Positions 28,570 through 28,648 of a DNA stretch of 64,000 bases are shown here, one piece after another. Under the pieces are notes generated by a model. The model saw only the letters and a list, made by a program, of their open reading frames with translations. It had not been told where the DNA came from and did no database searches. The position numbers and the translations under genes are program-made. The stretch comes from Octopus bimaculoides (lineage: Eukaryota). Within the stretch, counting starts at the first letter, position 1. Every line of letters begins with the position of its first letter. The stretch is taken from assembly GCF_001194135.2 (NCBI RefSeq), contig NC_069000.1:47123466-47187465 (forward strand), written 5' to 3'.

Positions 28570-28648
28570 AGGTCAAAAGAAGGATGTACCCTATGAAGTA
28601 CAAAGGTCATACTAAGGTCATGACGTCACAAAGGTCACATTAAGGTCA
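28570..28648 (+). promoter_or_regulatory. Candidate nuclear-receptor enhancer: AGGTCA, then DR5 - CRE (TGACGTCA) - DR5
   Basis: Perfect AGGTCA at 28570, 28604, 28615, 28632 and 28643; spacers TACTA and CATTA are both 5 nt; TGACGTCA at 28621-28628. Confidence 0.6.

What the first reader, a model, noticed from the sequence alone, without database searches (positions are those of the whole stretch)
28570..28648. DR5-CRE-DR5 cassette: five perfect AGGTCA half-sites upstream of an orphan nuclear receptor
The sequence reads CAAAGGTCA-TACTA-AGGTCA TGACGTCA CAAAGGTCA-CATTA-AGGTCA, with a fifth AAAGGTCA 34 nt earlier. It looks like a 28-nt duplication in which the half-sites and the 5-nt spacing are kept while the spacer bases differ. 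DR5 is the classical RAR/RXR element, AAAGGTCA is the NR4A monomer site (NBRE), TGACGTCA is a perfect CRE, and AGGTCATGACGT is a near-IR0. It lies 16 kb upstream of the receptor ATG and 6 kb upstream of the candidate promoter. Hypothesis: an enhancer integrating cAMP/CREB and nuclear-receptor input, possibly an autoregulatory loop. This would matter because gastropod RAR has been reported not to respond to retinoic acid.
Basis: partly seen in the sequence, partly recalled or inferred. Interest (0 to 1): 0.8.

Follow-up and report, generated by a model that had tools for sequence, protein, structure and literature searches.

The report
Tandem-duplicated nuclear-receptor half-site cluster
The five AGGTCA sites and the CRE are really there and are not chance, but they come from a small local tandem duplication in repeat-rich DNA between two genes, and nothing available here shows that they act as an enhancer.

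Summary
AGGTCA lies on the + strand at 28570, 28604, 28615, 28632 and 28643. That gives two perfect DR5s and three AAAGGTCA; TGACGTCA is at 28621-28628. If sites were independent the cluster would be very improbable (about 3.5e-6 per window).

The sites are not independent. Tandem Repeats Finder calls a 27/28-nt unit in two copies at 86% identity, with an 11-nt sub-repeat and a possible older decayed copy. The window is 12% tandem repeats. About one array carrying a half-site is expected by chance, and two are seen.

In the best alignment register, TGACGTCA in copy 2 lines up with TGAAGT-A in copy 1. The pattern "half-sites kept, spacers differ" is not significant (p about 0.09-0.11).

The cassette lies between a microsatellite block and a SINE. 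It is 7.8 kb upstream of a ZDHHC3-like ATG on the opposite strand, and 16 kb upstream of the receptor ATG. The receptor is NR7-like, an orphan family that reads AGGTCA.

Conservation and genome-wide copy number could not be tested, because no orthologous DNA could be reached. The most likely reading is a neutral slippage product. An enhancer born by duplication is not excluded.

The parts
28566..28592 (+). Possible older, decayed copy of the repeat unit. It has an intact first half-site (AAAGGTCA, 28568-28575); the second half-site has decayed to AAGGATG.
   Evidence: the repeat finder family D8: three copies of AAAGGTCA-N4-AAGG at 28568, 28602 and 28630, with spacing 34 and 28; sequence.
28594..28620 (+). 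Tandem repeat copy 1 (27 nt): TGAAGT-ACAAAGGTCAtactaAGGTCA. It contains DR5 no. 1 (28604-28620) and TGAAGTA where copy 2 has the CRE.
   Evidence: TRF period 28, 2.0 copies, 86% matches, score 82; register checked.
28621..28648 (+). Tandem repeat copy 2 (28 nt): TGACGTCACAAAGGTCAcattaAGGTCA. It contains the CRE and DR5 no. 2 (28632-28648).
28621..28628 (.). Palindromic full CRE, TGACGTCA, directly next to half-site 3. Together with it, it forms the near-IR0 AGGTCATGACGT.
   Evidence: 2 matches in the window, 0.53 expected.
27914..28460 (.). Left flank: a low-complexity block, (GGT)n/(GAT)n turning into (CCA)n-type sequence. The two ends form an inverted microsatellite pair.
   Evidence: I3: 35-nt arms, 97% complementary.
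28745..28983 (+). Right flank: a SINE-like interspersed repeat with an A-rich tail. Three other copies lie in the window (44265-44590 on the minus strand, 40930-41215 on the plus strand, 23335-23600 on the minus strand).
   Evidence: self-BLAST; alignment A1.
20685..20804 (-). First coding exon of a ZDHHC3-like gene (MAVFRSDPCGIVCLLITYGALLYADYAVVRHLVIPVMSDT, followed by a gtaag donor). It is transcribed away from the cassette, which lies 7.8 kb upstream of its ATG.
44639..45218 (+). First coding exon of the NR7-like orphan nuclear receptor: N-terminal domain plus the zf-C4 DNA-binding domain (DBD), with P-box CEGCKG. A strong splice acceptor lies at 44600-44622 and a donor gt at 45219.
51492..51788 (+). 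Open frame holding the last LBD exon of the receptor (helices 10-12). Its best solved-structure match is NR7.
   Evidence: Pfam PF00104, E 6e-9; PDB 7q71_A, E 2.2e-17, against 2.8e-10 for the next hit.

Best explanation
The cassette is a small, nested tandem duplication, in effect a two- to three-copy minisatellite. An 11-nt unit ending in AAGGTCA was duplicated, which created a DR5. Then a 27/28-nt block containing that DR5 was duplicated head to tail, giving two DR5s. An older copy upstream has partly decayed. The likely cause is replication slippage or unequal exchange, in an intergenic spacer full of such events. The two DR5s, three NBRE octamers and the near-IR0 are therefore copies by descent of one or two original half-sites. 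The perfect CRE arose in, or survived in, one copy only. The DNA could bind any AGGTCA-reading receptor in vitro (NR7, RAR/RXR, NR4A, ERR-type). The most likely status in vivo is a selectively neutral, lineage-specific sequence with no dedicated regulatory role. Shown here: the repeat structure, how common such repeats are nearby, the lack of a significant constraint signal, and the gene context. Inferred: the slippage mechanism and neutrality.
For: TRF finds the 28-nt (86%) and 11-nt periodicities exactly over the cassette. The repeat finder recovers the same units and a third degenerate copy (D8 and D10). The window has 179 tandem-repeat clusters covering 12% of its bases. Of these, 94 have a period of at least 7 nt. 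From the half-site density, 1.09 such arrays are expected to carry AGGTCA in the unit, and 2 are seen (P(>=2) = 0.30). The other is the DR1 AAAGGTCAAAGGTCA at 12210-12224, itself a 7-nt duplication. In the best register the copies differ at only 4 positions. The probability that all four miss the 12 core bases is 0.09-0.11, so there is no significant sign of purifying selection. The CRE aligns with TGAAGT-A in copy 1. No further RGKTCA site lies within 400 nt upstream or downstream of the five-site cluster, so the cluster is exactly as wide as the duplication. The cassette sits in a roughly 285-nt island between a microsatellite block and a SINE. In two related species, the parts of the loci that could be reached hold no AGGTCA DR0-DR8 pair and no TGACGTCA (L001: 10 kb upstream of the receptor exon; L003: ZDHHC3 exon 1 to exon 2 plus 954 nt upstream). 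AAGGTCA-core minisatellites with 11-, 17- and 28-nt periods exist as a dispersed repeat in an unrelated organism. This shows that such arrays arise and spread without reference to this locus.
Against: A neutral origin does not exclude present function; enhancers are known to be born from duplications and repeats. All 30 half-site bases are intact while 4 nearby positions differ, which is in the direction expected under constraint, though not significant. The 8-bp CRE keeps its CpG in a window with CpG o/e of 0.37. The nearest receptor gene encodes a protein expected to read AGGTCA direct repeats. Conservation and copy number, the two tests that could decide, were not obtainable.
Confidence: 0.6

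Rival explanations
1. This is the reader's hypothesis: a working composite enhancer. AGGTCA-reading nuclear receptors (RAR/RXR on DR5, NR4A or ERR-type monomers on the extended half-sites, or NR7 itself) and CREB/ATF on the CRE act together. They would regulate the NR7-like gene (possibly autoregulation) and/or the divergent ZDHHC3-like gene. The tandem duplication would be how the enhancer was built.
For: There are two perfect DR5s, three AAAGGTCA and a perfect CRE within 81 nt. All five sites are on one strand, and the two sites of each DR5 lie on about the same face of the helix (11-nt spacing). The receptor's P-box is EGCKG. Amphioxus NR7 homodimerises on direct repeats and pairs with RXR on them. 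The receptor ATG is preceded by a strong splice acceptor, so its promoter lies further upstream and nearer the cassette. The mouse Rarb2 promoter pairs a DR5 RARE with a candidate CREB motif (PMC3677938). No core base has changed between the copies.
Against: The constraint signal is not significant (p about 0.1). The CRE is present in one copy only. The oldest copy has lost its second half-site. DR5 was not among the elements tested for NR7, and the preferred ones were DR0 and DR4. [quoted passage not shown] Functional full CREs are typically promoter-proximal (my own knowledge, not checked here), whereas this one is kilobases from both ATGs. No similar element was seen in the reachable parts of two related loci.
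Confidence: 0.25
2. The roughly 285-nt island (28461-28745), or the cassette within it, is a fragment of an unrecognised interspersed repeat that carries an internal half-site minisatellite. The motifs would then be multicopy genome-wide, as Alu-borne DR2 elements are in primates.
For: The island is wedged between repeats. In an unrelated organism, AAGGTCA-core minisatellites sit inside a dispersed family of about 0.7-0.9 kb that shares 70-93% identity across more than 10 contigs. Repeat-borne nuclear-receptor elements are well documented (PMC1785376).
Against: No second copy of 28460-28800 exists in the 64-kb window even at word size 7, whereas the neighbouring SINE has four copies. No terminal inverted repeats or target-site duplications were evident around the island. 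There is no similarity to the metagenomic repeat family beyond the motif. A 64-kb sample cannot exclude a low- or middle-copy family.
Confidence: 0.12
3. Pure coincidence: five unrelated AGGTCA sites happen to fall together.
For: None beyond the overall abundance of half-sites (49 in the window against 38.6 expected).
Against: P is about 3.5e-6 per window under an independent-site model, and the largest cluster in 60 simulations was 3. The flanking bases of the sites are also shared, which shows common descent.
Confidence: 0.01

Closest known systems
Short tandem duplications / minisatellites made by replication slippage
   Same: The copies are head to tail and contiguous, with nested periods (11 nt within 27/28 nt), 86% identity and an older decayed copy at one edge. 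The neighbourhood is 12% tandem repeats.
   Different: There are only two to three copies. The unit happens to carry a transcription-factor half-site, which is what drew attention. Copy-number polymorphism was not tested.
Repeat-borne nuclear-receptor response elements, e.g. Alu DR2 RAREs (PMC1785376)
   Same: Consensus AGGTCA-type direct repeats are multiplied by sequence duplication rather than assembled site by site. Such elements can recruit receptors, yet most are not known to be used.
   Different: Alu elements spread by retrotransposition to about 100,000 DR2s. This is a single local duplication that makes DR5s, with no evidence of dispersal.
Vertebrate Rarb2 promoter (DR5 RARE plus candidate CREB motif; PMC3677938)
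   Same: A consensus DR5 lies next to a CRE-type motif beside a nuclear-receptor gene.
   Different: The Rarb2 elements are promoter-proximal, conserved and shown by experiment to be RA-responsive. Here the element is kilobases from either ATG, the neighbouring receptor is NR7-like rather than RAR, and no function or conservation is shown.
NR7 subfamily of nuclear receptors (PMC9535869; PDB 7Q71). This concerns the neighbouring gene, not the cassette.
   Same: It has a zf-C4 DBD with the AGGTCA-type P-box. The LBD C-terminus matches NR7 best (E 2e-17). [quoted passage not shown]
   Different: Only exon-level similarity was tested and no phylogeny was made. The DBD alone is closest to RAR/RXR among solved structures.

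Membership tests
DR5-type retinoic acid response element (RARE) | Two RGKTCA half-sites in direct orientation separated by 5 nt | tested here: met
   AGGTCAtactaAGGTCA at 28604-28620 and AGGTCAcattaAGGTCA at 28632-28648; rule as given in PMC1785376.
DR5-type retinoic acid response element (RARE) | Bound by RAR/RXR (or another receptor dimer) and confers receptor-dependent transcription | not testable with these tools
   Needs EMSA, DAP-seq, ChIP or reporter assays.
DR5-type retinoic acid response element (RARE) | Kept in orthologous loci of related species | tested here: inconclusive
   The orthologous interval could not be reached. The reachable parts of two distant relatives (L001, L003) have no DR0-DR8 pair, but only coding exons align at that distance. 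The close relative (L002, 91% DNA identity) is available only as a 967-bp contig elsewhere in the locus.
cAMP response element (full CRE) | Palindromic octamer TGACGTCA | tested here: met
   28621-28628.
cAMP response element (full CRE) | Kept in both copies of the duplicated unit, as expected if it were the selected core of the cassette | tested here: not met
   Copy 1 has TGAAGT-A at the homologous position.
cAMP response element (full CRE) | Promoter-proximal position and CREB occupancy | not testable with these tools
   Transcription start sites are unknown. The element is 7.8 kb and 16 kb from the two ATGs.
NBRE (NR4A monomer site) | Octamer AAAGGTCA | tested here: met
   28568, 28602 and 28630: 3 of the 6 in the window, where 3.45 are expected in the whole window. 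Binding was not testable.
Tandem repeat / minisatellite | Contiguous head-to-tail copies detected by an alignment-based repeat finder | tested here: met
   TRF period 28, 2.0 copies, 86%, score 82, plus period 11; D8 and D10.
Tandem repeat / minisatellite | Copy-number variation between individuals or close species | not testable with these tools
   No population or sister-species sequence of the interval could be reached.
Interspersed repeat (transposable element) | Several dispersed copies | tested here: inconclusive
   There is a single copy in the 64-kb window. Genome-wide copy number is unknown. The ORF-based search of public proteins found nothing. The control ORF, a third of which is SINE sequence, found only one spurious hit. 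That method therefore has no power here.
Interspersed repeat (transposable element) | Terminal inverted repeats, target-site duplications or coding remnants | tested here: not met
   None evident around 28461-28745, and no ORF of 30 aa or more crosses the cassette.
NR7 nuclear receptors (neighbouring gene) | zf-C4 DBD with an AGGTCA-type P-box, and an LBD most similar to NR7 | tested here: met
   PF00105, E 5e-30; CEGCKG; 7q71_A, E 2.2e-17 as top LBD hit. Phylogenetic placement was not tested.

The most novel reading that the evidence does not exclude
The tandem duplication created a working composite enhancer (two DR5s plus a CRE) in the spacer shared by the divergent NR7-like and ZDHHC3-like genes. 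NR7, alone or with RXR, binds it and regulates its own gene. NR7 is an orphan receptor lost from vertebrates, arthropods and nematodes, and no natural target element is mentioned in the passages of the NR7 paper read here, so this would be a first candidate in vivo NR7 response element. It would also be a datable example of an enhancer born by slippage.
Probability: 0.07. Interest if true: 0.6.

Novelty: new member of a known kind. Interest (0 to 1): 0.25.

Why it matters
If the cassette were functional, it would give NR7 biology a concrete cis-element to test. It would also show a response-element cluster being built by local duplication. As the evidence stands, it mainly illustrates a trap in motif reading: in tandem-repeat-rich genomes, one duplicated half-site yields textbook DRn elements at no cost. 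Perfect repeated motifs inside a tandem repeat are therefore weak evidence of function unless supported by conservation or chromatin data. A by-product is that the neighbouring "orphan receptor" can now be named as NR7-like. Its genomic context is also described: it is divergent from a ZDHHC3-like gene and probably has an upstream non-coding exon.

Tried and rejected
1. Self-BLAST of 28460-28800 against the window at word size 7 found no second copy.

2. tRNA and Rfam scans of the window found nothing.

3. I fished for orthologous or paralogous copies through proteins. A 480-aa concatenation of all six-frame ORF pieces from 28456-28830, searched against 5.8 billion proteins, gave 0 hits at E<=10.

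4. As a control, the ORF at 28695-28910 (minus strand) was searched against 1.84 billion representative proteins. About a third of this ORF is SINE sequence. The only hit was a spurious repetitive protein, P0102: 12 weak repeats at 35% identity. The ORF route therefore cannot see this genome's repeats, and result 3 says little about copy number.

5. Receptor exon search. A close relative (P0001) is 96% identical in protein and 91% in DNA, but only a 967-bp contig is available (L002). A distant relative (P0002) is 73% identical and comes from a 153-kb contig (L001). Only the coding exon aligns in its 20.7-kb locus, and there is no DR or CRE in the 10 kb upstream.

6. ZDHHC3 exon 1+2 search returned only exon-2 ORFs. 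L003 contains exon 1, but the locus stops 954 nt upstream of the ATG and the rest of the contig could not be fetched.

7. Exact look-ups of the window's own ORFs showed that the source genome is not on record.

8. A metagenome scan for DR5+CRE gave 0 hits. A scan for four AAGGTCA sites at 11/17/11 spacing gave 15 contigs. They belong to an unrelated AAGGTCA minisatellite family with no other similarity to the window.

9. Searching the literature for the run and assembly accessions, to name the relatives, found nothing. PMC4197984 (mollusc RAR) is not held.

10. Pure chance was rejected. Membership of the adjacent SINE was also rejected: the SINE alignment starts near 28745, about 95 nt downstream of the cassette.

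Full report
**What is there.** Reading 28300-28900 confirms the finding base for base. AGGTCA lies on the + strand at 28570, 28604, 28615, 28632 and 28643. AAAGGTCA is at 28568, 28602 and 28630. TGACGTCA is at 28621-28628. The two DR5s are AGGTCAtactaAGGTCA and AGGTCAcattaAGGTCA. They are the only RGKTCA DR5s in the window. No further relaxed half-site lies within about 400 nt on either side.

**Is it more than chance?** If sites were independent, yes. The background density predicts 0.056 sites in 79 nt. P(>=5) is 4.5e-9, about 3.5e-6 after allowing for all positions in the window. In 60 Markov simulations no cluster exceeded 3.

The sites are not independent, however. Tandem Repeats Finder reports a period-28 array of 2.0 copies at 86% identity over 28593-28648, plus a period-11 sub-repeat. 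The repeat finder recovers the same units and a third, degenerate copy: AAAGGTCA-N4-AAGG at 28568, 28602 and 28630 (D8). The four 11-mers are ACAAAGGTCAT, ACTAAGGTCAT, ACAAAGGTCAC and ATTAAGGTCAC. The cassette is therefore a nested tandem duplication, and the five half-sites descend from one or two originals.

**How special is that here?** The window holds 179 tandem-repeat clusters covering 12% of its bases, and 94 have a period of at least 7 nt. Given the half-site density, 1.09 of those arrays should contain AGGTCA in the unit. Two do (P(>=2) = 0.30). The other is a perfect DR1, AAAGGTCAAAGGTCA, at 12210-12224, which is a 7-nt duplication. In this kind of DNA, textbook direct-repeat elements appear as by-products of slippage at about the observed rate.

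That register is only 75% identical, and its last six positions look unrelated.

In the TRF register (28594-28620 against 28621-28648, 86%) there are three substitutions and one 1-nt indel. The chance that all four miss the cores is 0.09-0.11. In that register the CRE TGACGTCA aligns with TGAAGT-A, so the CRE exists in one copy only. The oldest copy has AAGGATG in place of its second AAGGTCA. The direction of these differences fits constraint, but they are not significant. A reader scanning many windows will also tend to pick repeats whose motifs happen to be intact.

**Surroundings.** To the left is a roughly 550-nt low-complexity block, (GGT)n turning into (CCA)n. To the right is a SINE-like element at about 28745-28983, with three other copies in the window. 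The cassette lies in the roughly 285-nt island between them. That island has no second copy in the window, no ORF of note, and no terminal repeats.

A ZDHHC3-like gene runs on the minus strand. Its first coding exon is at 20685-20804 and the next at about 7390-7530. A homologous exon pair occurs in a related contig. The cassette is thus 7.8 kb upstream of that ATG, in divergent orientation, and 16 kb upstream of the receptor ATG at 44639. The receptor ATG follows a strong polypyrimidine-cag acceptor, so an upstream non-coding exon and a more distal promoter are likely (inference).

**The receptor.** The exon at 44639-45218 encodes a zf-C4 DBD (Pfam E 5e-30) with the P-box CEGCKG. Among solved structures the DBD is closest to RAR-gamma and RXR. 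The last LBD exon (within 51492-51788) matches PDB 7q71, "Nuclear hormone receptor 7", at E 2.2e-17, against 2.8e-10 for the next hit.

[quoted passage not shown] Amphioxus NR7 is inferred to read AGGTCA. It homodimerises on DR0 and other direct repeats, and pairs with RXR only on DNA, preferring DR0 and DR4. DR5 was not among the elements tested. "Orphan nuclear receptor" is therefore right and can be sharpened to NR7-like. The autoregulation idea is chemically possible but has no specific support.

The source organism was not identified. A mollusc is plausible from the NR7 distribution and from a 66% match of the ZDHHC3 N-terminus to a gastropod protein. My impression that the SINE resembles octopus SINEs rests on memory only.

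**Conservation and copy number.** The public collections that could be searched here are reachable only through proteins.

- The close relative (96% protein identity, 91% DNA identity) is available only as a 967-bp contig at the receptor exon.
- The distant relative's 20.7-kb locus aligns only in the coding exon. It has no DR0-DR8 pair or TGACGTCA in the 10 kb upstream.
- A second relative's ZDHHC3 locus ends 954 nt upstream of the ATG.
- A six-frame ORF concatenate of the island found nothing. A control ORF that is about one third SINE sequence found only one spurious hit. That route therefore has no power for this genome.
- The source genome itself is not on record.

**A side result.** A metagenome scan for four AAGGTCA at 11/17/11 spacing returned 15 contigs, mostly from one assembly. 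They carry long AAGGTCA-core minisatellites with periods of 11, 17 and 28 nt, many as AAGGTCAAGGTCA (that is, DR0). The arrays sit inside a dispersed repeat of about 0.7-0.9 kb that is 70-93% identical between contigs. These contigs have no other similarity to the window. The spacing match is forced by the search pattern. The result does show that arrays of this half-site arise and spread as repeats elsewhere.

**Verdict.** Its best-supported cause is a local nested tandem duplication in repeat-rich intergenic DNA, most likely neutral (confidence about 0.6). A duplication-born NR/CREB enhancer remains possible (about 0.25). A fragment of an unrecognised dispersed repeat is also possible (about 0.12). 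Known parallels are repeat-borne receptor elements such as Alu DR2s, of which only some are used (PMC1785376), and the DR5-plus-CREB-motif arrangement of the Rarb2 promoter (PMC3677938). The statement that molluscan RARs are not activated by retinoids is supported by a recent review (PMC12965858). It bears little on this locus, because the neighbouring receptor is NR7-like, not RAR.

Noticed in passing
window 12210-12224 (+): A perfect DR1, AAAGGTCAAAGGTCA, which is itself a 7-nt tandem duplication. It lies in the first intron of the ZDHHC3-like gene and is the only other tandem array in the window whose unit carries AGGTCA.
   Followed up: partly
window 18029-18041: An everted repeat, TGACCTgAGGTCA (ER1), made of two perfect half-sites.
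   Followed up: no
window 44639-45218, 48852-49073, 50223-50795, 51492-51788 (+): The 'orphan receptor' is NR7-like. Its LBD C-terminus matches PDB 7q71 best (E 2e-17), while its DBD is closest to RAR/RXR. A strong splice acceptor just before the ATG (44600-44622) implies an upstream non-coding exon.
   Followed up: partly
window 48814-48821: The only other TGACGTCA in the window. It lies about 30 nt upstream of the open frame 48852-49073, which looks like an LBD exon.
   Followed up: no
window 34890-35000: A small CpG-rich patch (gtacgcgcgcgcg...cagtgacgtaggaggcggtggtggcgctgctg) between TA/CA microsatellites and assembly gaps. The window-wide CpG o/e is 0.37.
   Followed up: no
window 27914-28020 and 28416-28456: (GGT)n and (CCA)n blocks form an inverted microsatellite pair: 35-nt arms, 97% complementary, about 470 nt apart. 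The pair lies immediately left of the cassette.
   Followed up: no
window 48208-48281: A 29-nt unit (GGTGAGGGTTAGGGGGACAAAAGACAGGA) repeated 2.6 times at 100% identity in a receptor intron. This is a very young tandem duplication.
   Followed up: no
window 38244-39322: Reverse-transcriptase fragments (Pfam RVT_1), broken across frames and strands. This looks like a decayed LINE between the cassette and the receptor.
   Followed up: partly
L004-L018 (metagenome contigs, mostly JAAUYA01...): A dispersed repeat family of about 0.7-0.9 kb in an unidentified organism. It carries AAGGTCA-core minisatellites: 20-52 AGGTCA per contig, periods of 11, 17 and 28 nt, many as DR0 (AAGGTCAAGGTCA). It is unrelated to the window apart from the motif.
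   Followed up: partly
window 912-52969 (ten N runs, e.g. 2093-2881, 18776-19464, 34676-34766): The window holds 2,314 N in ten assembly gaps, several of them inside microsatellites. Distances across the gaps, including cassette to candidate promoter, are therefore approximate.
   Followed up: no
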